A stretch of 64,000 bases of DNA from Azolla caroliniana (taxonomy: Eukaryota; Plantae; Polypodiophyta), in the NCBI GenBank assembly GCA_043228905.1, contig JBHGNT010000001.1:33480001-33544000 (forward strand), read 5' to 3'. The position numbers and the translations under genes were made by a program. Positions 38,521 to 56,000 of the stretch are shown here, piece by piece. The notes under the pieces were generated by a model. It searched no databases, was not told the DNA's origin, and worked only from the letters and a program-made list of their open reading frames with translations. Within the stretch, counting starts at the first letter, position 1. Each line of letters starts with the position of its first letter.

Positions 38521-38632
38521 TTTGGCGGTGGGGGTGATGGCTAAAATTAGACGTAGTGTTGGAGGAGGAGGAGGGGGAGAACCATGTAGAATTGCTGCTC
38601 AATTTGGCACCACATCTCAGAATCTATCTATG

Positions 38633-38702
38633 CATACATACATACATAGTTTATAGACATACATACATAAATTGTTTATATACATACATACATACATACA
38701 TA
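38633..38702. repeat. (CATA)n-GTTTATAGA minisatellite, left half of the MULE target locus
   Basis: catacatacatacatagtttatagacatacatac...; continues at 52988-53072 beyond the element. Confidence 0.85.
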
Positions 38703-38719
38703 ATAGACACGTCGCATAG

Positions 38720-38877
38720 GCTCGTGTCTATTCTGCATCAAATCATAAAGAGGGCTGGTGAGGGAATCGCGGCCACAGACGGTGTAGGTCGCTTAGAGGA
38801 ACGCGCGTGCGATCTGCACCGTCAGATTTTGATAAGGAAGAACGCGCGAAAAAAAAAGTTGTCAGAGGTCGCCCAAC
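38720..38877 (+). repeat. MULE left terminal inverted repeat (~158 bp); subterminal GGTCGCCCAAC repeats continue to ~39058
   Basis: cgtgtctatt.tg...caaatcataaagagggctggtgagggaatcgcggccacagacggtg...gataaggaagaacgcgcg(a)ngttgtcagaggtcgcccaac is the reverse complement of 52830-52984. Confidence 0.92.
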
Positions 38878-39432
38878 TCTGAGTCGATGGTCGCCCAACC
38901 CTGTCAGAGGTCGCCCAACTCTGAGTCGTTGGTCGCCCAACTCTGACTGTTACAATTCTGACTGTTGCAAGTCGCCCAACCGTTTTAGGTCACCCAACCC
39001 TGACATTTGCAGGTTGCCCAACCGATTGGTCGCCCAACCGTTGCAGGTCGCCCAACCAAATGTATCATTTCAACCAAAATCTTCAAATAAGCTTGTTCAT
39101 TACCCTTAAAACTTACAATAACATATCAAACAGTCATAAAATCCAACCTTAAATTATTCAAAATCGACGATCTTTACCATACTTATGTTAAAACAAATAA
39201 TCATATTAAAACATAAAAGTTAAAAGTTAAAAAACATAAAACTTAAAACAGAGAACGTAAATCCACTTTAAACACCGTAAACCCAAATCAAAGGATGACA
39301 TACTTGAATAAGGAAACTTAAAACATAAATCAACATATGACATACTCCCAAATGCACTCATAAATCAACATAAATCCACTTGAAACATTGTAAACCCAAA
39401 TGCACTGGTCCGCAAAACCACCCAAGCTATGT

Positions 39433-41643
39433 TTATGGCTCATCCAAAGATGATGGCAAGATGCGACCACAATTCTTGCAACAATCAACATTTGAGTCCC
39501 TTGATCTAAAGGTCAAGGCATCGCAATGCAAGCATCGCATCTTCTCTGTTGCACATATTGGCAACCGCCTCCTAGCTCGACTTGTGCCTCTTTGCATTTT
39601 TCCTCTGTGTGCCTTGCAAGTGTTTGGGGAGCTGCCAATAAGATCTTGTGAAATGTTGATTGATGCTCCCCCTTTTGCACCAATTGCTTGCCTACGCCCT
39701 ATGGATCCACGGTCTTCTTCATTGGTTGGTTTCGGTGCACCTAGGTGATACACCAGCGTCTGACCTATTTCTTCAATGGACTCCATACATGCCAAAATTG
39801 TTGCACGGTCGAGGGATCGTAACCCTTGCCTAAGACATTGAATAGCCCCCTCAACCGTTTGTATTTTCGACTCCCATTCCTCCATTTGTGCTGTTATAGG
39901 GTTTGTCTCCTCGACTGGTTCTACTTCTGTCTCCACTTCCGTCTCTGTGAAATGGTCATTGCGCATATGGGTTGCATGATCTATAAAAGGCAATGACCCA
40001 CATAGATGTGGCATGTGCCTCTCAATAATCATCCTGATGCCGAGTATATGCTTACATTTACTCGTAGGGTCTTGGCAATCACAATATGAACATTGGAGCG
40101 ATACATTATACCATACATTTGGTTTTGTCAAGTTCAATATTTTAAACCAATATCGGGGCTCGTCCACAATATGCATTGTCGCATCATTAGTTTCATACCT
40201 CTCTAGTAGCCTTTCGGCCTCTTTAAGTCTTGTTGTTTGATCCCTACAATTTGCACGTGGTGCAAATCTACCACTCTCACATATTTCTTGTCGTTGCTTG
40301 TACCATTCAATAACAGTACCCCCGATGCAAGTGCCAGTTTGACTGTCCCCGATTAAAACATGCACAAGATCGGTAATTGATCGGTTTATCCTCCCTCTTA
40401 AGGCAGTATATTTGATAAACTGCCAATGTCTCTCCACAAGATTGGTAGTGTCAACATGTCCGTAGTTGAACATTCTACCAAATTTGGGCCACAGTTTCCT
40501 CCACACACATGTCAAGCCACACCATCCTCCTTCTATATATTGCCAAACACCTGGCTTGTTTGCATATTCTACCTTTAACTCCTCACATTGGGCATTGAAT
40601 GTGGATTCCGTAATGCATTGCATGAGTTGGCACATCCGATTATAAAGATGGTTTCTCTCAGTTACACTTACCTTTGGCAACAAATTGTCCAACCATGCTT
40701 TTTTTGCGTGGAAGTGACACAACAAAAGTCGACAATGTGTTTGCGACCTTTGCCCATTTGTAACTATCCAAGATAATCGGTCTGTTGCAATCACATTACT
40801 TATGGCATTATATGATGTCCAACTTTTATCGATGACTATGGCATTTGGCCTCACATTGGGCATCCGTGCAAATATGACTCTCAAGCAAGTTTCTAAAGCT
40901 ACTTGCTCATGGTTAGACCCCTTATCAGAACTACATATCATGTACCATAATGGGATACCAACTCCCATGGCATTTGGGGCCACAGCTGCATATAATGGCA
41001 AGCCAAATTGGTTTGTTTTAAACGTGGAATCGATTGCCCAAGAGTTGTTTATTGACAATCGCTCACACATCTCTAACATCCATTCATCTTGGAGCACCAA
41101 GATGAACGGTTGCCTTGCGGGAGATCCATATTCACCAGGCAAGTAGGGTTGGACATGAGCCACCTTCCCAAGATCTCGGAGGGCATAGGCATCTTGCATC
41201 ATCAAAGACCAATCAACCGCTGACATGGCACTCCCAATTTTTAACTTGTTGGCCATGTTATTGACCTCCTTTGGTATCATAAAGAACCTATAACTCACAA
41301 GGTCTAATGGACTAGCCTTGGACTTATGATATGCTTCCTTACGCATGCTCATTTGTGCCACATGTCGTGCGCAACCAACATCAAAAAGGTCATCTCTACA
41401 ACAACTTATAACATTTGGGGCCACTGGCAAATAGTACGCATCTGGTCTACTTCCCGGTACATGACCCGTATGAGGTCCATATATTGAAACGGTCACTGTC
41501 CCATGGTCAACCCCGCCATTCATTCGAGCGTTCACATGAAAAGTACACCCACATCGAGATGAATGCTTTCTACGTCGAGTGCATGGATATTGCTTGTTGG
41601 CCACACCGCATCGGTGACAATTATACCTAGTCACATGTGCACC
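39433..41643 (-). pseudogene. MULE transposase, C-terminal 736 aa (gene interrupted by copia)
   Basis: WRKY/GCM1-like finger YNCHRCG...CGCTFHV...HTGH; MULE DDE core DSTFKTN / IVIDKS / LLCHFH / TTNLVERHW; SWIM CDC..PTSKCKH; terminal CLHC...CKNC. Confidence 0.93.
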
Positions 41644-41648
41644 CCTTG

Positions 41649-42256
41649 TGTTGGGATTACGGTCCCTTCGGATGGGATGGTCGGATATCGGAGATGAATG
41701 CCGACAAGCCCGGTTTCGGTTTCAGATCCGGATGACGAAGACCCCGGTTTCGGTACCGGATGACGAATGTACCCGGAGAGCGATCCGAATGCAGGGACAT
41801 ATCCGTGAATATGTCTGCTATGGGCCCCTGAGGCTATAGTTGTAAATAGCCCCAAAGTCATATATGTATAAATATGACTTAGGGCAACTCGTTTTGTAGT
41901 AGCTTATCATTTTTCTGTTTTTCCACTCAAGAGGAGTGAAGAGGGAGCAGCCGTGAGAGAGAGAGAGATAGAGCGCGAGAGAGGAAGAGGACGACGCCTC
42001 TGTGTATTTCCGCCGCCTGTGGCGAGGACAGCGAGCTCAAGGTCGTCGCCTTGGAGCTCGTCATTGTATACTTCTCTTTGTATAGTGTTGTTTGGAGTCT
42101 TGTACTCCCGTGGTTTTTTCCCATCTAGGGTTTTCCACGTTAATCCCTGTGTACTCGTGTGTTTCTCTCTTTGGTTTCTATTTTCTGCTGCATTGATCCG
42201 CGATTACTCGGTTGTGGCGGAGCGAAGAAGGTGAATCGAAGCGTTGATTCCCAACA
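41649..42256 (+). repeat. copia 5' LTR (608 bp)
   Basis: TGTTGGGA...TCCCAACA; 3 substitutions relative to the 3' LTR. Confidence 0.97.
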
Positions 42257-42259
42257 AAC

Positions 42260-42271
42260 TGGTATCAGAGC
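42260..42271 (+). promoter_or_regulatory. Primer binding site for initiator tRNA-Met
   Basis: TGGTATCAGAGC, 3 nt after the 5' LTR. Confidence 0.93.
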
Positions 42272-42286
42272 GAACTGCTGCAGAAA

Positions 42287-45200
42287 ATGGAAGGCGGCGG
42301 CAGCGGGCAGCCGGGGATGATGGTGCTGAATGCACAGAATTACGCCGACTGGAAGATCAAGATGGAGGATCTCCTGATTGTTCGGGACCTGTACGAACCG
42401 ATTGACAGGTCGGAAATACCGAAAGGAGTACTTGAGTCGGAGTGGAAGCTCCTGAACCGGAAAGCCGTAGCGACGATCCGACAATATGTCGATGTAAGCG
42501 TCCTACAACATGTGGCGAACGACACCAACGCATATGAGATGTGGAAGAAGCTGTCGGGCCTCTATGAGAGGAAGAATGCGTTGAACCGGACCTCCCTGAT
42601 GAGGAAGATAGTGAATCTCAAGTACCGGGACGGCGAGAGTATGGTGGAACACGTAAGCACGTTCATGGGATTCGTGAATCAGCTTGCGGCGATCAAGTTC
42701 CCGTTGGAGGATGCAATGCAAGCCATCATCCTGATGTGTACATTGCCGGAAAGCTGGGAGAACTTGGTGGTGACTCTCAGCACCTCCTGCACAGAAAATA
42801 ACTTGTCCTTGCAAACGGTAAAGACAAGTATTTTGAATGAAGAAGCGCGTCGGAGAGATAAGGAACCGGCCTCCGACCCGAAGATGTTGTTTACCGAATC
42901 GGATCGGGGAAGACAATGGAACCGGAGTCCGCAAAGACGGGAGAAGTCGGGGACCCGGTCGCAGTCAAGAGGAAGGCCCACATGCTTCCATTGTGGGAAG
43001 CCCGGGCACTTCCGAAAGAATTGTCGGCATTACCGAAAGGACAATGGAACCGACAACACCGATTCGAAGAAGTCACCGGAGAGAAACGGTGCATACCGGG
43101 GAGCCACGGACCGGAGAGGTTCGGATCGGCGAGGGCAGGACCGGAAAGGAACAACGGCACTCGCGGCAAGTGAGGAAGAAATCATGCTCATCACCGAAGA
43201 AGGTGAGCTAAACGTTGCCGGCGATGAGACGACCTGGGTGGTCGATTCCGGAGCATCGTTCCACCTGAACCCGGAGAGAAGATACTTCTCATCCTACACA
43301 GCCGGTGAGCATGGCTGTGTTCGGATGGGAAACGAAGGTACGTGCCGGATTGCCGGCATAGGAGACGTGTGGTTGACAACCCCGACCGGATGCAAAATGC
43401 TGCTGAAGAATGTCCGACACGTTCCGGAGGTCCGACTGAACCTGATTTCGGCCGGGAGGCTAGATGATGAAGGCTACACGGGTAGCATCCGGAACGGTGT
43501 CATGAAGTTCAGCAAGGGGAGCTTGATAGTGGCTCGGGCCCGGAAAGTCAACACACTGTACCTGATGAATGCCCGGTTATGTCCGGAAGAGCTGAATGTG
43601 GCAGCCGACACTGCCGGTGAGCTGTGGCACAAGAGACTGTGCCACATGAGTGAGAAGGGGATGAAGAGGCTTGCAGAAGACAACCTTATCCCAGTGAAGC
43701 ATGTGCACCTGGAGAAGTGCACCGATTGCCTGGCCGGTAAGCAGAACCGAACCTCCTTCCACTCAAGGCCACCGAAGAGACGTAGTGTACCATTGGAGTT
43801 GGTACACACTGATGTGTGTCAAGTAGAAACGAAGTCACATGGCGGAGCCCAGTACTTCGTGACATTCATTGATGACCACAGCCGGAAGCTGTGGACGGCA
43901 CCGATGAAGACAAAGGACCAAGTGTTGTGCGTCTTCAAAGAACTCCACGCGAGAGTGGAAAGGGAATCCGGCAAGAAGCTGAAAGCGATACGAGCGGATA
44001 ACGGAGGGGAATACCGGGGGCAGTTCCAGGAGTACTGTCGCTCGAAGGGAATCCGACTCGAGTTTACTGTGCCGAAGACGCCGGAACTGAACGGGCTGGC
44101 CGAGAGGATGAACCGGACCATAATGGAGAGGGTCCGGAGTATGCTGGCGCATGCGAAATTACCCAAGGGGTTTTGGGCTGAGGCAATGTCGACGGCGACA
44201 TACGTGATAAACAGATCACCCTCAGTACCTTTGGACGGAGACACGCCGCAGAAAGTGTGGACCGGTAAGGAAGTGTCCTACCGGCATCTGAAGGTGTTCG
44301 GGTGTCTCGCATACGTGCATGTGGCAAAGGACCGGAGAGGAAAGCTAGATCCAAAGACCCGGCCATGCATATTCCTCGGTTACGGCGATGACGAGTTCGG
44401 CTACCGAGTATGGGACCCGGTCGACAAGAAGATATTCAGGAGTCGAGACATCATCTTCATGGAGGACAAGACACTCGCCGACTAGGAGTCGGAGAAGAAG
44501 ATGAAGAGCTCCAAGTCGACCGGCGAGGATCAACTCTACAAGGAGCAGTCCCGACCGGCAAGGGACCGGTTAGCACTCGAGGATCCGGCCGAAGACGGTG
44601 AAGAAACAGAACCGGCCGAAGAAGATGAAAATGATACCGGAACCGGCCCCGATCCCGAAATGGATTCGGATGAAGAAGAATCGGAAGAACCGGTTACCGA
44701 AGCTCCGGAACGAAGATATCCTCTAAGAGAGAGAAGGGCCCCCCGGAGATTTCCGGAACCAGAGCACGTGCTGCTAACCGACGAGGGGGAGCCGGAGAGC
44801 TTTGAAGAAGCAAAGCATGACACCCAGAGCCGCAGGTGGTTGAGTGCCATGCAGGACGAGATGGATTCCCTGCATGAGAACCACACATATGAACTTGTGG
44901 AGTTGCCGAAAGGAAAGCGGGCACTTCGAAACAAGTGGGTGTTCAAGCTGAAACCGGGAGATGCCGGAAACCCCCCGAGATACAAAGCCAGGATCGTGGT
45001 GAAGGGGTTTCAGCAAAAGAAGGGCGTCGACTTCGACGAGATATTTGCCCCGGTAGTGAAGATGACCTCCATCCGGACGGTGCTGAGCATAGCGGCAAGC
45101 ATGGACCTCGAGGTAGAACAGATGGACGTAAAGACGACATTCCTTCACGGTGACCTCGAAGAAGAGATCTACATGCAGCAACCGGAAGGATTCGAGAAGA

Positions 45201-46360
45201 AAGGGAAGGAGCACCTGGTATGCCGGTTGAAGAAGAGCCTTTACGGACTGAAGCAGGCTCCCCGGCAATGGTACCGGAAGTTCGACTCCTTCATGACCGA
45301 CGAAGGGTACCTCAAAACGCAGTCCGACCACTGCGTGTTTGTGAAGAAGTTCGAAGAAGGAGACTCTCTAATACTCCTCCTGTACGTGGACGACATGTTG
45401 ATCGTCGGACGGGACCAGGTCAAGATACGGATGCTGAAGAAGGCTCTTCACCGAACCTTCTCAATGAAGGACCTGGGTCCGGCGAGGCAAATACTAGGGA
45501 TGCACATCATTCGGGACCGGAAGAAGAAGCAGTTGTGGCTGTCACAGGAGAAGTACGTGACGAAGGTGCTTCACCGGTTCAACATGTCGGAAGCAAGACC
45601 GGTCGGATCGACCCTCCCGACAAACTGCAAGCTGTCCAGCAAGCAAAGTCCCAAGACAAAGGCTGAAAAGGAGGATATGATGAAAGTACCGTATGCCTCA
45701 GCCGTCGGGAGCTTGATGTACGCCATGGTGTGTACGAGACCGGACATCGGATATGCAGTCGGAGTGGTGAGCCGGTACATGAGCAATCCCGGCAAAGAGC
45801 ATTGGAACGCGGCCAAGTGGATACTCCGATACCTGAAGGGCACAACGAATGTGTGCCTCCGATTCGGCTCCGGTAAACCCGAACTCGACGGTTTCACCGA
45901 TTCGGATATGTCGGCTGATGCAGATACCAGCCGGTCCACATCAGGGTATGTGATGACGTATGCAGGGGGAGCTGTTTCGTGGCAGTCGAGGCTGCAGAAG
46001 ACGGTTGCGTTGTCAACCACGGAGGCGGAGTACATGGCAGCTGTTGAAGCCGGCAAGGAAATAATATGGATGAAGGACTTCATTAGAGAGCTCGGTATCC
46101 AACAGGAGGAGTACCGACTCTACTGCGACAGTCAGAGTGCAATCCACCTTGCGAAGAACGCGGCCTATCACTCCCGGACGAAGCACATCCAGCGAAGATA
46201 TCACTGGATCCGGGAAAGGATAGAAGACAAGGAGTTCGTGCTGACAAAGATCCAAACGGACGAGAACGGGTCGGATATGCTGACCAAGGTGCTCACACCC
46301 GACAAGCTGGAAGCATGCCGGAAGAGGATCGGATTGGAGAGACATCCCATGCCGAAGTGA
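42287..46360 (+). pseudogene. copia gag-pol polyprotein with one in-frame TAG at 44483-44485
   Basis: The ORFs 42287-44485 and 44501-46360 share a frame. Zn knuckle CFHCGKPGHFRKNC, protease VVDSGAS, WHKRLCH, integrase D-D-E (HTDVC/ADNGGEY/AERMNRT), RT YVDD, RNase H TDSD/TEAEY/CDSQSA. Confidence 0.95.
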
Positions 46361-46368
46361 AGGGGGAG
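46359..46368 (+). promoter_or_regulatory. Polypurine tract
   Basis: GAAGGGGGAG, 2 nt before the 3' LTR. Confidence 0.9.
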
Positions 46369-46370
46369 TT

Positions 46371-46978
46371 TGTTGGGATTACGGTCCCTTCGGATGGGAT
46401 GGTCGGATATCGGAGATGAATGCCGACAAGCCCGGTTTCGGTTTCGGATCCGGATGACGAAGACCCCGGTTTCGGTACCGGATGACGAATGTACCCGGAG
46501 AGCGATCCGAATGCAGGGACATATCCGTGAATATGTCTGCTATGGGCCCCTGAGGCTATAGTTGTAAATAGCCCCAAAGTCATATATGTATAAATATGAC
46601 TTAGGGCAACTCGTTTTGTAGTAGCTTATCATTTTTCTGTTTTTCCACTCAAGAGGAGTGAAGAGGGAGCAGCCGTGAGAGAGAGAGAGATAGAGCGCGA
46701 GAGAGGAAGAGGACGACGCCTCTGTGTATTTCCGCCGCCTGTGGCAAGGACGGCGAGCTCAAGGTCGTCGCCTTGGAGCTCGTCATTGTATACTTCTCTT
46801 TGTATAGTGTTGTTTGGAGTCTTGTACTCCCGTGGTTTTTTCCCATCTAGGGTTTTCCACGTTAATCCCTGTGTACTCGTGTGTTTCTCTCTTTGGTTTC
46901 TATTTTCTGCTGCATTGATCCGCGATTACTCGGTTGTGGCGGAGCGAAGAAGGTGAATCGAAGCGTTGATTCCCAACA
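46371..46978 (+). repeat. copia 3' LTR (608 bp)
   Basis: Direct repeat of 41649-42256. Confidence 0.97.
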
Positions 46979-47692
46979 CCTTGTGATCCCTGTACGGAAG
47001 CATGTGTGATACCTCAATTGAACATCTATGAGCGTATCATCAACCCTATGTGCCTCTATCTTGATCACTTCTATGGGTCTAGACTTTTTATATTTCACGA
47101 CACTTGTCCCCTCCATGTCAGATGGAGTTAACCTCGACACAACTTGACAACCACATTGGTCAATCACTGCTTTCACATACGCACTAGGGATCCCATGGTC
47201 ACGAAGGTCATTGGACCAAAGTCTCTTTAACTCTAACAGAGTACTTGTCAAAGAACGGTGTGATGCGCCACAATGTGACGCCAATACTATCTCCCTCCAT
47301 TTCTCTACGTGCGTAATCTGAAGATGAGGCGATGCCTTAAGGTGTATTGCATTCTCATTTCTAAGCGTGAGGCGACTCTTCATGCGCCTCCATGCATGTA
47401 AATTAAGAGGTGCACCCCTTGCGAGTGTGCTTAATATTTCAAATGTTACCTTAACTTGACCCAATAAATCTTTAAGCATTAAATCGTACATACCTCTAGT
47501 GAACGCAAAATACCTCGCCGAACAATACATGAAGGGATCAACCTCCTCCGCCTCTTCTTCAGATGAAGCCGACTCATAGTCTTCGGATGTAGACGAATCC
47601 AAGTCTTCATCGATGGTTGCGGAGTATGGTGATGCATAACCATCCTCAGAATCATACAAGGACGTGATGAAATCTATTTCATTTTGATTCAT
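46979..47692 (-). pseudogene. MULE transposase, N-terminal 238 aa (acidic tract + HHCC-like motif)
   Basis: Removing the copia plus one TSD gives the continuous frame ...FRTGITR|GAHVTRYNCHRC... Confidence 0.92.
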
Positions 47693-47709
47693 CTCGACAA
47701 CTTGGTTTA

Positions 47710-48100
47710 TAAGAATGTGATTAATCAGAGGTAATTTAAGCTAGAGAATGTGATAAAGTAAATTTGATTAAGACAGAGATTATGATAAAGATAGAGAATC
47801 TGATTATGATTAAGATAGAGACGACGATTATAAGAATATGATTAATTGAACATGATTAAGCTAGAGAATGTGATTAAGTGAATTTGATTAAGACAGAGAT
47901 TATGATTAAGATAGAGACGGTGATTACAAGAATCTGATTAAGCTAGAGAATGTAATTAATTGAACCTAATTAAGATAGAGAATGGGATTATAAGAACGTG
48001 ATTAAGATAGAGAATGTGATTATAAGAACTTGATTAAGACAGAGAATGTGATTAATTGCTTCGGATTAAGATAGAGAATGTGATTAATTGAATCTGATCT
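47710..48100. repeat. Degenerate short-unit tandem array (gattaagatagagaatgt-like) immediately upstream of the transposase ATG
   Basis: Many copies of gattaag(a/c)tagagaatgtgatta variants. Confidence 0.85.
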
Positions 48101-48223
48101 TAAAAGGTAATTAACTGGAGATGGAGTCAGCTCTGATTAAAATGACGGTGAAGGGTTTAATATGACTTAAAATGTGACCGTTTTTTTGGCCGTTTAGGTA
48201 ACAGGTTGGGCGACCTAGATTAT

Positions 48224-48710
48224 GAGGTTTGGGCAACCTGGTTGGGTGATCATATCAACATAGAATAAATTTTAAGAGGTTTGGGCAACCTAGTTGGGTT
48301 ACCATATTAAAAGAGAATTAATTTTAAGAGGTTTGGGCAACCTGGTTGGGTGACCATATCAAAAGAGAATTAATTGTAAGAGGTTTGGGCAACCTGGTTG
48401 GGTGACCATATCAAAAGAGAATTAATTTTAAGAGGTTTGGGCAACCTGGTTGGGTGACCATATCAAAAGAGAATTAATTGTAAGAGGTTTGGGCAACCTG
48501 GTTGGGTGACCATATCAACATAGAATAAATTTTAAGAGGTTTGGGCAACCTTGTTGGGTTACCATATTAAAAGAGAATTAATTTTAAGAGGTTTGGGCAA
48601 CCTGGTTGGGTGACCATATCAAAAGAGAATAAATTTTAAGAGGTTTGGGCAACCTGGTTGGGTGACCATATCAAAAGAGAATTAATTTAAAGATGTTTGG
48701 GCAACTTGGT
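48224..48710. repeat. 52-bp tandem array, 9 full copies plus a partial, each carrying two copies of the MULE subterminal motif
   Basis: gaggtttgggcaacctggttgggtgaccatatcaaaagagaattaattttaa; variants of units 1-2 recur in units 6-7 (260-bp higher-order period). Confidence 0.95.
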
Positions 48711-49191
48711 TTCTCCGTTGAATGAAAAATCGTAGTTCATTAAAGAAATAAAAAAAGTCCTTTTTTTAGACATACGCGAGGAAGGTTCTAGGAACGTTGC
48801 TAAAGTCAATTGAAAGTCTTTTAGGAACTAGGAGTTGTGTGAAATTAGAATTTACCAATAAGATAGAGAAAGGATTAAGTAGATGATTGGTTAAAACGTC
48901 AAATCTATTGGAGAACACAACTTGAGAAACTTTTAAAACAAAAAATCAACTTTAGATCACAACTTAGATTGGTTGAAAACAACAAATCACCTTTAGATCA
49001 CAACTTGTGATTGGTTTAAAACAACAAATCAACTTGAGATAAACACTTGTTGTAAACAACATTTCCATTAATAAGTAATCGCGATATACAATGAGTCGAT
49101 TCTCGCTATACAAAATTTGTGTGGATTCCAAAATATAGTTATAACATCAGCTCTATAGCAAAATTTGTGCTGAAAACAACATTCACAAAAT

Positions 49192-51244
49192 TTACAATAT
49201 GGAGCCACCGGTCGTAGGTGCAAATCCTAGTACCCTTCGTGCCCACTCGTCCATATGATTCCGAAGTGAATCCACTTCGTGTTTGGTGAACCACATCTCT
49301 GTGCCCTGTCACCAAATATGTATAAGAACACATCTATACACAATCCACATGAATAAGGCATTGCAATTACACTTACAAAAGTCGGAGATATCCATCCTTG
49401 TAAGAACTCCCCCACCAACATTTGGATAGTCTTCATGACGTAAAAGCCACAATCCCAACAATTTGGCTGAGTTGGGATGTGCAATACGTGATGTTGACCC
49501 TCAGGCACAATGGTGTGGTCTAACAGTTCAGATGAAATTTCCCGAATCACCAACTCTGCCATTCTCTGCATGTTGTCAGTCGCTGCGTTGTTCAATGGAT
49601 CGCAGAAGACTACTTTGCTAGTTAGCTTAGAAACTTTCTGTCGCATCTTCGTCCACAACACCCAATGCCCGTCAAGCACGATTGGAATGAACATATAATC
49701 ACATTCAGCCACCTTCCTAAGGATGGCTTGCCCTTTCATCGTCTGTTGGTGTAGCGTCACCCAGAGTGGGTCGACGACGGTGAAGCGTTATGTCACCTCG
49801 AGTGGCAACGAATACTCCATCCACAACGTGAATAAGGTCATAGTCCACGTCGATGCCATTTCACGACACTTGCACATGGTCTCAAGATCTGACTCGGTAA
49901 CGTCAAGGGCCAAATCGAGACGTTGGCAGGTCAGCTGGTACCTGAATGCATAGAAATATGTAGTTTGAGTAGGTACATCACACCCCATGTCAGTTAGTAG
50001 GATACTAGTTTATATTTCACATAAACCCTACCTGGAAAAGTGTTTATTTGGTGTTTGGATCCATAACCTTATGCCCTTGCCATGCTGAATTTGAACTATG
50101 GCCACATTCGGTGCAGCGTCATCTGAATCTGATGTTAGGGAATAAACATCAGTGTGTGACTCGACCTCCTTCCGTCGGACTGGCATCTTTTGTCGTCTCC
50201 GTCTCGGTGGAGTGGACACACCACCCTCAGATGGGTTTAGAGCCTCATCCACATCCGTGGACACACCCTGTGGTTGGGTGGATATCCCCGCCTTTTTAGA
50301 CTGTTTCACCACAATAAGACACATGTTATTATTTGAATTCTACCAATAAACCCTCCAACACATATATGAAATGAAATCCTCGCTCATACTTACATAAGAA
50401 TCCAAACCGGATGATATCTTCTTCGCCAACATTTCCAAACGCTCATCCTTTTTGGAGTCGTATATGGCCATCTCATTGTCCATAAATTGCGCCACGAACT
50501 CTGCCTCTGTGTCAAGACGGAGTTCAGACGGAATAGAGTGGTACCTCGAAACAACCCTAACCTTCAACTTCTGGATATATGTTTGCCGATTTCTGTTGTA
50601 CTTGATTTCGGGGTCCATGAATCTTCTGAGTGATCTCTGACTCTCATAGTTATTAAAGCATACCCCCAGAATACCCTCCTCCTCCTCTATACGCATCCCT
50701 CGTGGTAGGACTATGTCTATTCCATGTTCCCTGCGTAAATGTGATTCCATGTCATTTTTTTTGCGATACCACCTTGGCGAGAGGCGGCAATACTCAGTAT
50801 AGATACACGCACGGGCCTTGTTCCTATTTGCATCTCTTCCAACCTTATACAACGAGTCTGGGCGAGGAGCATCTGTTCCTTCTGTATGTGTTACATATTT
50901 AAGATTGACATAAAGATTGGCATAAAGATTGACATATTGGAACGACACCAAATCCACATACCATTTGGAGGAGCATCTTGGTCAAATGTTGCCATGGCCT
51001 GTATGGGCTCGATCTGAGGCGTATGTGTTTGATCCATTCTGTCCCCACTCGTACACATGTCGGCTGACAAACTTCGCCAATGTCTTCTAACGAAGACCCT
51101 TTAACAAATCACGAGTCAACATACATGCATCAAACCCTAAACCAGTATTAGGGGAGATTGGTTCGTGACATACCTCTCTTGAGTTGGATATATGTCACTG
51201 TTATCGAAATCCCACCAATCTTTGTACTTGGACTTGGAAGCCAT
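49192..51244 (-). pseudogene. MULE-borne Ulp1/SENP-family (peptidase C48) cysteine protease with an N-terminal C2H2-like zinc finger. Exons 51244-51174, 51098-50962, 50881-50394, 50300-50032, 49941-49377, 49305-49192 (547 codons); premature TAA at 49790-49788
   Basis: Five GT-AG introns with consistent phases (total 1644 nt). Catalytic H (IPIVLDGHWVL), D (FCDPL), Q and C (PTQPNCWDCGFYV); CIYTEYC-x15-HLRREH. Confidence 0.85.
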
Positions 51245-52581
51245 CTACCACCATTCAAGTAATCAAACATTTTTTGAATTTAATACTCAAACACACACAA
51301 TATTAAGTTTAAGCAAGCAAATCATTAAACCCTAAACCCGAAACCCTAATCCCTCATTTCCAAATCTCCCCATATGTTATATCCTACTTATCATGTTCCA
51401 AATCTCTAATTAGAGGAGGAATATAATGATGATGGTGGTGACCCTCCCTGTATGTAAGGATTGTGTGTAAAACAACATATGAAGGTTAAATGATTTAGTA
51501 AATGTGGTTTGTCCTAAAAGGAAAAGTCATGTGTTGCAGTGAATGTGGTTGATGTGACCTCTAAGAAAAAAAGATGAGGATGGAACAATGGCAATGCTTT
51601 AGTGCCATTGTTACACATTATTGATGACTAAAAAAATGAAGAAAAGAAAAGATGACAATGAGATTGTTACACATTGTTGATGACAAAAAAAAATTGATGA
51701 TAATGATATGAATGACTTCAGGGTTAAATCAATGCCATTCTGAATCAAACAAGGATTGAGACAGTTTAAACATGGCACAGAGTTGTCTCTGGGGATTGAC
51801 AATAAAAGAGAGTTAATTGAATCAAAGCCAGAGTCTCTGGTGTTGGTAAACTAGAGAGAGTATAGGATTAAAGAAGTAAGAAGGTTTATGAAGAGGGGGT
51901 AAGGCTATTGATGATGGTATGGAACCATGATTATGATGATGAGTGAATGTGTAATTGATAGAACATAAGATAGTTTTCCTTTCGTTATGTAGAGGTTGCT
52001 TGCATGCCGCTCAACGAAAAGTGTTACACATTCTCGAAGAAGATTAAAAAAATGTGGTAATTGATGTGGATGATCTTAGGGGGAAGATTGAAATACCCCT
52101 TTTTGAATCAATCAAACCAAGGATTGAGACAATTCAAATGCAACTTCGTGATTATTATTACTATTTTTTCCATTTGTTTTGGGGGGATAATAGTGATGGC
52201 ATATCCATGTTTTGTACCTTAACTATGCAGTTAAAAGACTCAGGATGCAATATTGAATACTGCTACCTTATTCAATGCATAGATTTCATGTCTAAGGTAG
52301 AGCCTTCTACATGATTTTAGTAATGAATCCTTATCCTTGTAATCCCTCAACAAGAAACAAAATCCCTCAACTACTCCAAACCCTAATCCCTCAACTATTC
52401 CTACCACATGTAAAAAAAACAGAAAAAGTGATGTGATAGGGTTTAGTACATACCTGGGAATAGTGATGGAGGAGATTGATTGTTGTGTATGTTGATTGCA
52501 GGCCGCCTAACGCCCAACTCTTTCCCGGCAAAAGAAACCTGTCAATCTCGTTTGAAAAAATGAGAGATAATGACAGGTTTT

Positions 52582-52591
52582 AGGCTTTTAT
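52582..52591 (-). promoter_or_regulatory. Candidate TATA box of the Ulp1 gene, with a putative 5'-UTR exon ending 52454 and intron 52453-51245
   Basis: TATAAAAGCC on the - strand; CAG|GTATGT donor at 52453; TAG|ATG acceptor directly at the start codon. Confidence 0.5.
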
Positions 52592-52829
52592 AGTCATCGG
52601 TTGGGCGACCTACATCTTTTATTGGGTTGGTTGGGTGACCAACTCAATATAAACCCTAAAGCAGTTGGGCAACCTACTTTTGCAAGTCACCCAACCGCTT
52701 TAAAAATAAATGGTTGGGTGACCTGTATCTTTTATTGAGTTGGTTGGGTGACCAACTCAATATAAGCCCTAAAGCAGTTGGGCAACCTGCTTAAACTGGT
52801 CACCCAACGGTTGGGCGACCTCTGACAAG

Positions 52830-52987
52830 GTTGGGCGACCTCTGCACAACTTTTTTTTTCGCGCGTTCTTCCTTATCGAAATTCGACGATGCAGATTGCA
52901 CGCGCCTTCTCTGAGCAACCTGCACCGTCTGTGGCCGCGATTCCCTCACCAGCCCTCTTTATGATTTGTGTCATAATAGACACGTCG
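52830..52987 (-). repeat. MULE right terminal inverted repeat; subterminal GGTTGGG(C/T)GACC motifs at 52599-52840
   Basis: Reverse complement of the left TIR with scattered mismatches. Confidence 0.92.
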
Positions 52988-53072
52988 CATAGTTTATAGA
53001 CATACATACATACATACATAGTTTATAGACATACATACATACACACCTAAATAGTTTATATATACATACATA
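52988..53072. repeat. (CATA)n-GTTTATAGA minisatellite, right half of the MULE target locus
   Basis: catagtttatagacatacatacatacatacatagtttatagacatacatac. Confidence 0.85.
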
Positions 53073-56000
53073 TCAGCAGAGGCATTTGGCTTGGCTTGGC
53101 TTAGCCTAGCCCTGCCTGGCCAAATACCAACAACTAACTAACTTCCCCAAGTAAGTAAGTAGCCCGCCCATACACCCCCCCGTATTTGACCTACTAGTAC
53201 GGGAGACTATGAGTTTGTCTCATATTTGTTTGTTTGCCAATGTAGCAAGGAAGAAACTATTAAGCAAACATAAGGAGAACGCCAAACAGAAGTATGAGCC
53301 GGAGGTAATAATAGTATAACAAGTTGCATATCCAAATAGACATTTCATAGACAAAGAATCAATGTGCAAGAGATACAATCCCTTTTTTATATTACAACAA
53401 TATACATGATGATTTATCTATTGATCAACAATTAGCTACCATGCTCGATGGCTTAAGCACACATATATTGCAAGTTGGTGGAGAGAGTGATGTGGGTACC
53501 AGTTACACCATAAGAGCAAATTATTCTCTCGCTTCCGAGGGATCTGGGTGGAGAGAGTGGTTGATTGAAAGATTCATTGTTTTTGGTCCCATGGTTGTGG
53601 AGGATGATTCTCCGATGAATTCATGATATATCTCCAATTGGTGGAGATAGCCACATGTCAGATACATGCCACAAAAAAGAAGAGTTGATACAACACAAAA
53701 ATGGCATGTGTAATGATGACAAAAGGTGCATGTCACACTCATATTGGGTGGAACCAACATACACAATCCTTTACCTAATGAATGAATGCCTAACCTCTAG
53801 AGTGCACAACGTGAGTTTGCATAAACGCTTCATAGAGTAAAGCTTGATCTATCACATTTGAAAGTATTTGGCAACATCGCTCATGTACACATACTTGGAC
53901 TTGAAGTCAAATAAGTGTCCTGAAGTTTTAACAATAAGATTGGCAAGAGCAACGACATTGACCTTAACCACCTCCTATTGATGTATGCATTCTTGTAATT
54001 CCAATTAGCTCTACCATATTATGCTTAGCCTTTGTTTTCACCAATTGTTGACAATGAAGTATGTTTGAAATTTCACTTCATATAGGCTATTTGCATTACA
54101 TTTAACCCACTGGTCTTTGCCCCAATTTTTCAACATGAAAATGACAAGAAGGCTTGCATAATCATGCGAATAAGTGGCACGATGATTTGAACGAAAATGA
54201 TGGAGACAAAGTGTACTATTAGCATTTGAACAAGCAACATCACATAGATTGCCTGCAATATGTGAATTTCCCTTGAATCTTATCCATGACCCAAAAACCA
54301 ATTTGGGCATTCATATTTGGATCATTATGAGGATTAATTAGAGTTCAGAATACAACTTATAGTTGTAATGTTATTGTTCATTTGAGCTTAAATGGTAACA
54401 GATTTTTAGTTTGAAAATTTGGGCACACTTGTGTGATTTAAAAAGTGTAGGTGTATATCATATCATTTGTAAAACAATTGGGGGTATATTTGTGTTCTCC
54501 TATGACATTCGATGTTAAACAAATAACTCAAAGTATGCGGACATAAGTAACTTGAAGCACTCACGATGCTTTATAGATAATGAACATTAAATTTTCAAGT
54601 AAAAAAGGAATGGTCAACTATATCATGACCAATGAACACTGTAGGCCATATAACTCACCCACTAGGTGGACAACAGTTAGATATTGTGGAGTATGGGATC
54701 ACTTCCAAACTAAAGTTTTCATCAATGGACTCAATTTCCACTAGGAGAAAACAACTCCAAATGCTAATAAGATGGCATTATAACAAAAGCTATGGTGCAC
54801 TCTTAAAGGTTGAAAGAATTTTTATACTTCAACAATTCGAGCATTGTCTGTGATACTAAAAACACTTCATCCATTCGACAATAATATTTAGGAAGCACCT
54901 ATTGCAATATTATTACAGGATCCTCAATATTTTTGTACTTGTGGTACAATACATGGTTGTCTTTTACCGATCATTGGTCTAGGTGGTTGTGGATAAAATA
55001 CACATTCTTTGCACTGCAAAATGCACACGAATTTGCTTTATTAATTCCATGGGTCAATGATAATAACAAAAACTTTTTGTAAAGTATAACTTTAAGGGTA
55101 TACAAGGGAGGCCACTTCATCTTATATATACAAAAGGAAGTTCATGCATGATCCATACATATACTCATAATTGTGACACTATTCCATGAAATTTCCCACA
55201 AACCAATGTAGCATTTGCCAGTACCCTTGTCCTATTAAGTGCTCATGATAATAAAAAGAAATAAAAAATGAAGTGGGAATTTTCAAACAATGTGAAAATA
55301 ATTGGGCGCTAATATGGTGGATAAAGATAAGAATAAGTTGAATGTGATTAGGTGTTTATATGCTAGGTGATATTGGAACTCACATTCAGAGAGAGAGAGA
55401 GAGAGAAATTTATTAGCATCCCGGTAGATGAAACACTTGCACATAACATGTTGATTGTCGGCTCTCAATGTTCTAGACTTTTGTAGTTGAGACTTGAGAG
55501 TGCACATTGTCACTACAAGAGAAATATGTGCAAAAATATTTCTCCATTGAAAATATGGTGAAAGTGAACTCGAACACCATTGAACATGGAGCATTGTTGT
55601 TTGATACTTGATTCATAAACTTTTTGAAGGAGGAATATGCACAGTAAACGCATCTCTTCTTTCACATCCCAATTCCCATCATGTCATGTGGAAACAATGG
55701 TGTAGATAGCAAACCCTTGTTCAATGATGATCCCTGTTCAATAGGTTATACATTCTATTAAGTATATAAAGTATCTAGTCGTATTTCTTTACCATATATA
55801 CAATGGAGATCTAAAATCTCGTGTGATAGTTGTGTGTTATTGATTCTCACGGCTAGACATGGGCCACACTTTCTTTCATGACAAAAGCATGTAATGGGGG
55901 CTACCTTGTTTACTCTCTGAGAGAAGGTAGATGTTACATTACATCGAAACCTTTATTTATATAATTAGTAATTTATGAATTCTTGCTTATACACTCCACA

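What the first reader, a model, noticed from the sequence alone, without database searches (positions are those of the whole stretch)
38699..38732. MULE left boundary looks like a right-end/left-end junction (circle- or tandem-type), not an ordinary TSD
Seen: the 21-mer CATAATAGACACGTCGCATAG occurs at 38699-38719 and again at 52972-52992. Its first 16 nt are the tip of the RIGHT TIR, since they pair with the left TIR CGTGTCTATT. The left flank therefore reads [right tip]-CATAG-[left TIR], a local hairpin ATAGACACG/CGTGTCTAT with an 11-nt loop. Deleting 38703-52991 restores a perfect host unit (catacatacatagtttataga), so the extra tip is element-derived rather than host target. Established: MULEs normally make 9-11 bp TSDs; their bacterial relatives (IS256 family) transpose via circles with abutted ends separated by a few flank-derived bases, and extrachromosomal Mu circles are known in maize. 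Inference: this may be a genomic fossil of a circle junction or a collapsed head-to-tail dimer, with a short (5-bp CATAG) spacer/TSD.
Basis: partly seen in the sequence, partly recalled or inferred. Interest (0 to 1): 0.8.

Follow-up and report, generated by a model that had tools for sequence, protein, structure and literature searches.

The report
Copied transposon tip beside fern MULE
A 14.3-kb Mutator-like jumping gene in a fern-like genome has an exact 16-base copy of its own right tip just outside its left end; this is real but private to this copy, and it is most likely a DNA-repair or copying scar rather than a relic of a circular transposon.

Summary
The 21-mer occurs exactly twice, at 38699-38719 and 52972-52992, with none expected by chance.

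Ten ends of the same family, read from metagenome contigs, fix the termini at 38720 (left, starts GCT) and 52987 (right, ends TCG). The 21-mer is therefore 16 nt of right terminus plus CATAG. The left flank reads [right tip]-CATAG-[left end]. Only 5 bp flank the element as a direct repeat, so the rival reading of a 9-bp duplication with ends at 38720/52983 is not supported.

The circle-fossil reading is weak:
- None of 10 independent other ends has an abutted opposite tip.
- The locus holds one full element plus 21 nt, which one circle cannot supply.
- The one MULE studied biochemically cuts and pastes through hairpins on the flanking DNA.

My best reading (about 0.5) is a short templated copy of the element's own right junction. 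It would have been laid down by template switching during break repair or replication, using CATA and CATAG microhomology.

A collapsed head-to-tail dimer (about 0.2) and a second insertion beside an old remnant (about 0.1) remain possible.

The family's normal duplication length could not be measured. An unverified first-reader note (s1-514490) describes a similar architecture elsewhere in this genome.

The parts
38610..38698 (.). Host satellite, left flank: units of (TACA)n-TAG-TTTATAGACA type
   Evidence: Units of about 29 nt. Other ends of the family also lie in TACA-type microsatellites.
38699..38714 (+). Extra 16-nt copy of the element's right terminus. The first 4 nt (CATA) could equally be host. 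The last 12 nt have no counterpart in any host unit of this window.
   Evidence: Identical to 52972-52987. It carries right-type diagnostic bases (TCG after CACG), not the reverse complement of the left tip.
38715..38719 (.). CATAG, left copy of the only direct repeat that abuts both true termini (spacer or 5-bp duplication)
38702..38732 (.). Local hairpin: extra tip paired with the left inverted-repeat tip, 10-bp stem and 11-nt loop
   Evidence: -10.6 kcal/mol, z = -5.6.
38720..38862 (+). Left terminal inverted repeat, including the left-specific 3-nt tip GCT
   Evidence: Seven left-type ends with differing flanks (six independent) all start here.
38867..39056 (+). Left subterminal array of the 11-nt family motif
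   Evidence: 25 matches in the window, all inside the element, against 0.34 expected.
39433..41634 (-). Transposase, C-terminal 733 codons, with the MULE domain
   Evidence: PF10551. 94% identical to residues 242-974 of P0001.
41649..46978 (+). Nested Copia retrotransposon that splits the transposase gene
   Evidence: gag, integrase and RT domains. The 608-bp LTRs differ at 3 positions. 5-bp duplication CCTTG at 41644-41648 and 46979-46983.
46979..47692 (-). Transposase, N-terminal about 238 codons
   Evidence: 90% identical to residues 1-238 of P0001.
48205..48667 (-). Internal array of the family motif
49227..49760 (-). Ulp1 (peptidase C48) domain of the second gene
   Evidence: PF02902, E = 1.6e-11.
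52600..52840 (-). Right subterminal motif array
52846..52987 (-). Right terminal inverted repeat, including the right-specific 3-nt tip (TCG on the + strand)
   Evidence: Right ends in L001 and L003 stop at the same base and have different flanks.
52972..52992 (+). Right junction (16 nt of terminus plus CATAG), the presumed template of the extra copy
52993..53075 (.). Host satellite, right flank

Best explanation
The extra tip is a scar private to this copy. It is a 16-17-nt templated copy of the element's own right junction, inserted at the left junction.

Proposed course (inferred). A DNA end or nascent strand ending in the host CATA repeat mispaired with the CATA that lies 12 nt inside the right terminus. 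It copied through the terminus into the flanking CATAG. It then returned to the left junction through that same CATAG and went on into the left end.

The two junctions are 14.3 kb apart on the chromosome. They would lie side by side at the base of a stem formed by the 140-bp inverted repeats, or in a transposase-held paired-end complex. Replication slippage, interrupted gap repair after an excision attempt, or end joining with filler synthesis could each do this.

Shown here: the sequence identity, the true termini, the microhomologies, and the absence of the feature in other copies. Inferred: the copying route and its timing. The hairpin is then a by-product with no function.
For: 1. The insert matches the right junction exactly, 21/21, with none expected by chance.
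2. Family termini lie at 38720 and 52987, so the copy spans the right terminus plus 5 flank bases.
3. Both edges of the 16-nt insert sit in microhomology: CATA on the left and CATAG on the right.
4. The CATA 12 nt inside the right terminus is conserved in all right ends seen: the window, L001, L003 and P0073.
5. Ten independent other ends lack any abutted opposite tip, so the feature is not a family trait.
6. Removing the insert and the element restores a host unit of normal length.
7. The tip carries right-end bases, so fold-back copying of the left end is excluded.
8. The transposase was intact until a very young Copia insertion, so excision attempts were plausible.
9. Templated filler and microhomology-guided template switching at transposon breaks are documented (PMC8277862; PMC4423477). 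Replication slippage has been proposed for excision of the rice MULE Os3378 (PMC5499845).
Against: - The template lies 14.3 kb away in cis, so the model needs the two ends to be brought together.
- It needs two switches in one event.
- It works cleanly only if the flanking repeat next to the left terminus ended in CATAG. That implies either a 5-bp duplication, which is atypical for MULEs (8-10 bp), or a 9-bp duplication plus a further small loss (TTTA on the left, or one CATA unit on the right).
- A dimer collapsed through the same CATA microhomology would give an identical sequence.
- No reads, empty allele or second example were available.
Confidence: 0.5

Rival explanations
1. Collapsed head-to-tail dimer. 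Two copies once sat in tandem, separated by CATAG. The tandem could have arisen by unequal exchange between the flanking duplications, by insertion of a sister copy, or by homologous re-integration of an excised circle into the resident copy. A deletion between the host CATA and the CATA 12 nt inside the first copy's right end then removed nearly all of the first copy. The reader's circle or tandem idea belongs here.
For: The geometry matches a right end-spacer-left end junction. The deletion edge has 4-nt microhomology. Bacterial relatives of the IS256 family make such junctions, with 6-8-bp spacers, and form tandem copies (PMC7780238). Closely spaced MULE ends (VANDAL21) undergo alternative transposition (PMC12312487).
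Against: It needs at least two rare events, or three if it starts from a circle. Only 16 nt of the first copy remain. No junction appears among 10 other ends. A monomer circle alone cannot give one unit plus 21 nt. If the family makes 8-10-bp duplications, the spacer should be that long, not 5 bp. Muta1 excision goes through flank hairpins, and the paper holds no mention of circles.
Confidence: 0.2
2. Two hits at one hot spot. An earlier copy landed in this microsatellite and was lost, leaving 12-16 nt of its right tip. The present copy then inserted into the 5 bases right next to that remnant.
For: The family repeatedly lands in TACA-type microsatellites (earlier notes s1-504171 and s1-514428). 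The right tip is identical across copies, so a remnant of another copy would look the same.
Against: The second insertion would have to fall exactly at the remnant's terminus and make a 5-bp duplication. With a 9-bp duplication the two 9-mers at the true termini do not match. MULE-type excision cuts at the element ends, so footprints of 12-16 element bases are not expected.
Confidence: 0.12
3. Assembly or polishing artefact that added 16 bases next to a long inverted repeat.
For: None directly. The junction lies in a microsatellite beside a repeat, which is hard ground for assemblers.
Against: The insert is an exact, in-register copy of a specific distant junction with clean microhomology edges. 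That looks like biology rather than consensus error. The surrounding satellite units are regular.
Confidence: 0.05
4. Ordinary insertion with a 9-bp duplication (ends at 38720/52983) into a host site that already held the tip-like bases by chance.
For: The host unit contains ATAGACA, a 7-nt match to the tip.
Against: Right ends in L001 and L003 continue through the final four bases (GTCG) before their flanks diverge. No other host unit in the window holds the 12-mer.
Confidence: 0.03

Closest known systems
Filler DNA and templated insertions from microhomology-guided template switching (interrupted gap repair, end joining, fork stalling and template switching) at DNA-transposon breaks
   Same: It is a short exact copy of sequence that can lie close by in space. 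Microhomology sits at both edges, and it is a one-off at a transposon junction (PMC8277862; PMC4423477).
   Different: The template is the element's opposite junction, 14.3 kb away in cis. The copy sits outside an intact terminus, so it mimics an end-to-end junction.
IS256-family circle and tandem junctions (IS256, ISCth4)
   Same: The transposase belongs to a superfamily related to MULEs. The right and left ends face each other across a few bases that match the flank of the left end (PMC7780238).
   Different: Only 16 nt of the right end are present. The spacer is 5 bp rather than 6-8 bp. The structure is chromosomal rather than circular, is unique to one copy, and no circle pathway is shown for eukaryotic MULEs.
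Alternative transposition and fractured ends (maize Ac/fAc; VANDAL21 head-to-head pairs in Arabidopsis)
   Same: An extra end fragment lies next to a whole element, with ends in reversed orientation (PMC12312487).
   Different: Known fractured ends are hundreds to thousands of bases long and keep transposase-binding sites. This one is 16 nt and probably inert.
MULEs with multiple terminal repeats (tomato, Arabidopsis)
   Same: They carry an additional terminal sequence at one end of a MULE (PMC3310237).
   Different: Those extra repeats are at least 50 bp by that study's search criteria, mostly lie in tandem, are internal to the duplication and are mobile in many copies. Here the extra piece is tiny, comes from the opposite end, lies outside the terminus and is private to one copy.
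Ulp1-carrying Mutator-like elements (KI-MULE or VANDAL-like two-gene elements)
   Same: It has a MULE transposase and a Ulp1 protease gene, long inverted repeats and motif arrays.
   Different: It is a fern-type family with conserved unlike 3-nt tips and a liking for TACA microsatellites. Earlier notes of this scan raised both features.

Membership tests
Mutator-like element (MULE) | Transposase with the MULE DDE domain | tested here: met
   PF10551, E = 2.2e-09 and above the curated cut-off. 94% identical to a 974-aa intact relative.
Mutator-like element (MULE) | Long terminal inverted repeats (>100 bp) | tested here: met
   About 140 bp at 91%.
Mutator-like element (MULE) | 8-10 bp target-site duplication | tested here: not met
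   At the family-defined termini only CATAG (5 bp) is repeated. This holds for this copy only. The family value could not be measured, because the one other complete copy (L003) shows no duplication at all.
IS256-type circle or tandem junction | Right and left ends abutted head to tail with a short spacer that matches the flank | tested here: met
   Right tip-CATAG-left end at 38699-38732.
IS256-type circle or tandem junction | A complete, functional right end on the far side of the spacer | tested here: not met
   Only 12-16 nt are present. Host satellite starts directly upstream.
IS256-type circle or tandem junction | Junctions recur among copies or exist as circles | tested here: inconclusive
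   0 of 10 independent other ends, but the sample is small. Circular DNA and reads cannot be tested with these tools.
Templated filler insertion by template switching | Inserted bases are an exact copy of an identifiable template | tested here: met
   21/21 identity with the right junction.
Templated filler insertion by template switching | Microhomology at the switch points | tested here: met
   CATA (4 nt) and CATAG (5 nt) at the two edges.
Templated filler insertion by template switching | Sporadic: absent from sister copies | tested here: met
   Absent from all other ends sampled.
Templated filler insertion by template switching | Template near the break | not testable with these tools
   The template is 14.3 kb away in cis. 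Closeness through pairing of the inverted repeats or a transposase complex is inferred, not shown.

The most novel reading that the evidence does not exclude
The junction is a true right end-spacer-left end product of this fern MULE family's own transposition chemistry: a relic of a tandem dimer or a re-integrated circle. That would mean this lineage keeps an IS256-like end-to-end joining step and makes 5-bp rather than 8-10-bp duplications.
Probability: 0.12. Interest if true: 0.7.

Novelty: new member of a known kind. Interest (0 to 1): 0.3.

Why it matters
If the best reading holds, this is a cleanly readable example of a templated repair scar. It copies one transposon junction onto the other, and it shows that such scars can imitate circle or tandem junctions. 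That matters for anyone who mines genomes for transposition intermediates.

It also fixes the true, unlike termini of a fern Ulp1-carrying MULE family. It adds independent ends that support the family's habit of landing in TACA microsatellites.

The conserved CATA inside the right end gives a testable prediction. Similar scars, and 12-nt solo tips, should recur at low frequency in TACA repeats.

Only the minority reading, real end-to-end joining in a eukaryotic MULE, would be a major finding.

Tried and rejected
- **Family-intrinsic left hairpin or terminal direct repeat.** Rejected: other left ends start at the same base with unrelated flanks.
- **9-bp duplication with ends at 38720/52983.** Rejected by the right ends of L001 and L003.
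- **Fold-back (snap-back) copying, or a hairpin on the left transposon end.** Rejected: the extra tip carries right-end bases and the palindrome is not centred on the terminus.
- **Monomer circle integration.** Rejected on content: the locus holds one unit plus 21 nt.
- **Measuring the family's duplication length.** The only other complete copy (L003, 7,724 bp) has no duplication and unrelated flanks. It is possibly a chimeric short-read assembly. No other locus holds both ends.
- **Source of the 21 odd bases left of L003's element.** None found.
- **The look-up of encoding contigs.** It was closed, so the 8-kb ENA contigs of the closest transposases could not be fetched.
- **Collection scans.** The single metagenome scan went on the inverted-repeat word, so the junction pattern and the host flanks (empty site) could not be searched there. 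Scans of bacterial and archaeal genomes and of viral contigs found nothing.
- **Earlier-findings look-ups by sequence.** Blank.
- **Proteins translated from the inverted repeat.** Searching them gave three more ends, but only 2-11 residues of flank each.

Full report
**Observation.** It has no other match in the window, even with three mismatches allowed, and none appeared in shuffles. The inverted repeats span about 140 bp at 91% (38723-38862 and 52846-52984).

The terminal 10-mer occurs three times only. Two sites are the inverted-repeat tips. The third, at 38702-38711, lies in the left flank in right-end orientation. With the left tip it forms a hairpin of 10 bp and an 11-nt loop (-10.6 kcal/mol as single-stranded DNA, z = -5.6).

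**What the element is.**
- ORF 39433-41634 (-) carries the MULE transposase domain, and ORF 49227-49760 (-) carries a Ulp1 protease domain.
- All 25 copies of the 11-nt subterminal motif lie inside 38867-52840.
- A Copia element at 41649-46978 splits the transposase. It has 608-bp LTRs with 3 differences, a 5-bp duplication CCTTG and a tRNA-Met-type primer site.
- Intact relatives encode one 974-aa protein. Residues 1-238 match 46979-47692 at 90%, and residues 242-974 match 39433-41634 at 94%, with no stops in either half.
- So this copy had an open transposase frame until a very recent Copia hit.
- The nearest named homologues are Adiantum proteins at about 40% identity. That fits the fern origin given in earlier notes.

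**True termini.** I therefore spent the single metagenome scan on a 21-nt word of the inverted repeat, which returned seven ENA contigs.

Read inward from the flank, all left-type ends begin with GCTCGT directly after unrelated flanks. These are L002, L003, L004, L005 (the same locus as L006) and L007. Right-type ends in L001 and L003 begin, on the reverse strand, with CGACGT after unrelated flanks (alignment A2).

The termini in the window are therefore 38720 and 52987. The two tips differ in their outer three bases, and that difference is conserved. The alternative of a 9-bp duplication with the right end at 52983 fails.

**Is the junction a family trait?** No. None of the contig ends has an opposite tip nearby.

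To widen the sample I used the fact that one frame of the inverted repeat is open, so gene callers predict spurious proteins running from the flank into it. A word search with that peptide returned seven such proteins. Three come from contigs not already held and carry enough flank to read: P0070 and P0072 at left ends, and P0073 at a right end. All three flanks translate TACA/TGTA-type repeats, and none shows a tip.

In total, 10 independent other ends carry no junction.

**Host site.** The flanks are 29-nt satellite units. Removing 38703-52991 gives a unit of the same length as its neighbour with one mismatch. No other host unit holds the 12 non-host bases of the insert. Every model considered below restores the same host unit, so the reconstruction does not discriminate among them.

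**What the structure allows.**
- The extra tip carries right-end bases, so fold-back copying of the left end, or a hairpin on the transposon end, is excluded.
- The locus holds a whole element plus a second copy of its right junction. That is more than one unit, so a single circle opened anywhere cannot supply it.
- The 16-nt insert is bounded by CATA on one side and CATAG on the other. The CATA 12 nt inside the right terminus is conserved in every right end seen.

**Best explanation (about 0.5).** A strand ending in the host CATA repeat mispaired with that internal CATA and copied through the terminus into the flanking CATAG. It then returned to the left junction by the same five bases.

The two junctions would meet at the base of a stem formed by the 140-bp repeats, or in a paired-end complex. 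Slippage across such a base has been proposed for excision of the rice MULE Os3378 (PMC5499845). Microhomology-guided template switching and filler DNA at transposon breaks are documented (PMC8277862; PMC4423477).

The route is inferred. The identity, the termini and the microhomologies are shown.

**Rivals.**
- *Collapsed head-to-tail dimer (about 0.2), including one made by a circle recombining with the resident copy.* It gives the same sequence but needs two or three rare events. It predicts a spacer as long as the family's duplication.
- *Second insertion next to a remnant of an earlier copy (about 0.12).* This fits the hot-spot behaviour. It needs a 5-bp duplication placed exactly at the remnant's end.
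- *Assembly error (about 0.05).* It cannot be tested here.
- *A host-born tip with a 9-bp duplication (about 0.03).* contradicts it.

**Open point.** At the true termini only 5 bp are repeated, whereas MULEs typically make 8-10 bp. I could not measure the family value. The only other complete copy, L003 (7,724 bp, no Copia), has unrelated flanks and no duplication. It is perhaps a chimeric assembly.

If the family makes about 9 bp, this copy has also lost TTTA on the left or one CATA unit on the right. That would favour a repair scar over the dimer and two-hit models.

**Comparison with known systems.** The geometry resembles IS256-family junctions, where ISCth4 spacers are 6-8 bp and the duplication is 8 bp (PMC7780238). 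It also resembles fractured-end arrangements that drive alternative transposition, now reported for VANDAL21 (PMC12312487). But only 16 nt of the right end are present.

Multi-repeat MULEs (PMC3310237) differ in the size, orientation and mobility of the extra piece.

**Verdict.** The circle-fossil mechanism is unlikely. I file the feature as a new instance of a known kind of repair scar in a fern Ulp1-carrying MULE, with interest 0.3.

An unverified first-reader note (s1-514490) describes a MULE with a terminal direct repeat and a left-end hairpin in a microsatellite elsewhere in this genome. If it proves to be the same architecture, recurrence would raise the interest.

Noticed in passing
window 41644-46983: Young Copia retrotransposon of 5,330 bp. 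It has 608-bp LTRs with 3 differences, a duplication CCTTG and a tRNA-Met-type primer site. It sits inside the MULE transposase gene and splits it near residue 238-241.
   Followed up: yes
window 38720-38743 and 52964-52987; alignment A2: The outer bases of the two ends are conserved but unlike: GCT on the left, and CGA on the right when read on the reverse strand. The next 7 variable bases also mostly differ between left and right ends across copies. P0071 shows a mixed tip.
   Followed up: partly
L001-L007 flanks; P0070, P0072, P0073: Most ends of this family lie in TACA/TGTA-type microsatellites, in either orientation. The host unit here also contains ATAGACA, a 7-nt match to the inverted-repeat tip.
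   Followed up: partly
L003:1111-8834: A complete 7,724-bp relative without the Copia. It has a microsatellite plus 21 unexplained bases on one side and unique sequence on the other, with no target-site duplication. It is either a chimeric assembly or a rearranged copy.
   Followed up: partly
window 38556-38882 (+) and 52873-53019 (-): One frame of the inverted repeat is open for about 55 codons. Public protein sets therefore contain spurious 'proteins' (P0069-P0075) that run from the flank into the repeat. These can be used to read flanks of other copies.
   Followed up: yes
window 48205-48667: Internal array of the family's 11-nt motif, spaced 52 bp apart, between the transposase start and the Ulp1 gene.
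   Followed up: no
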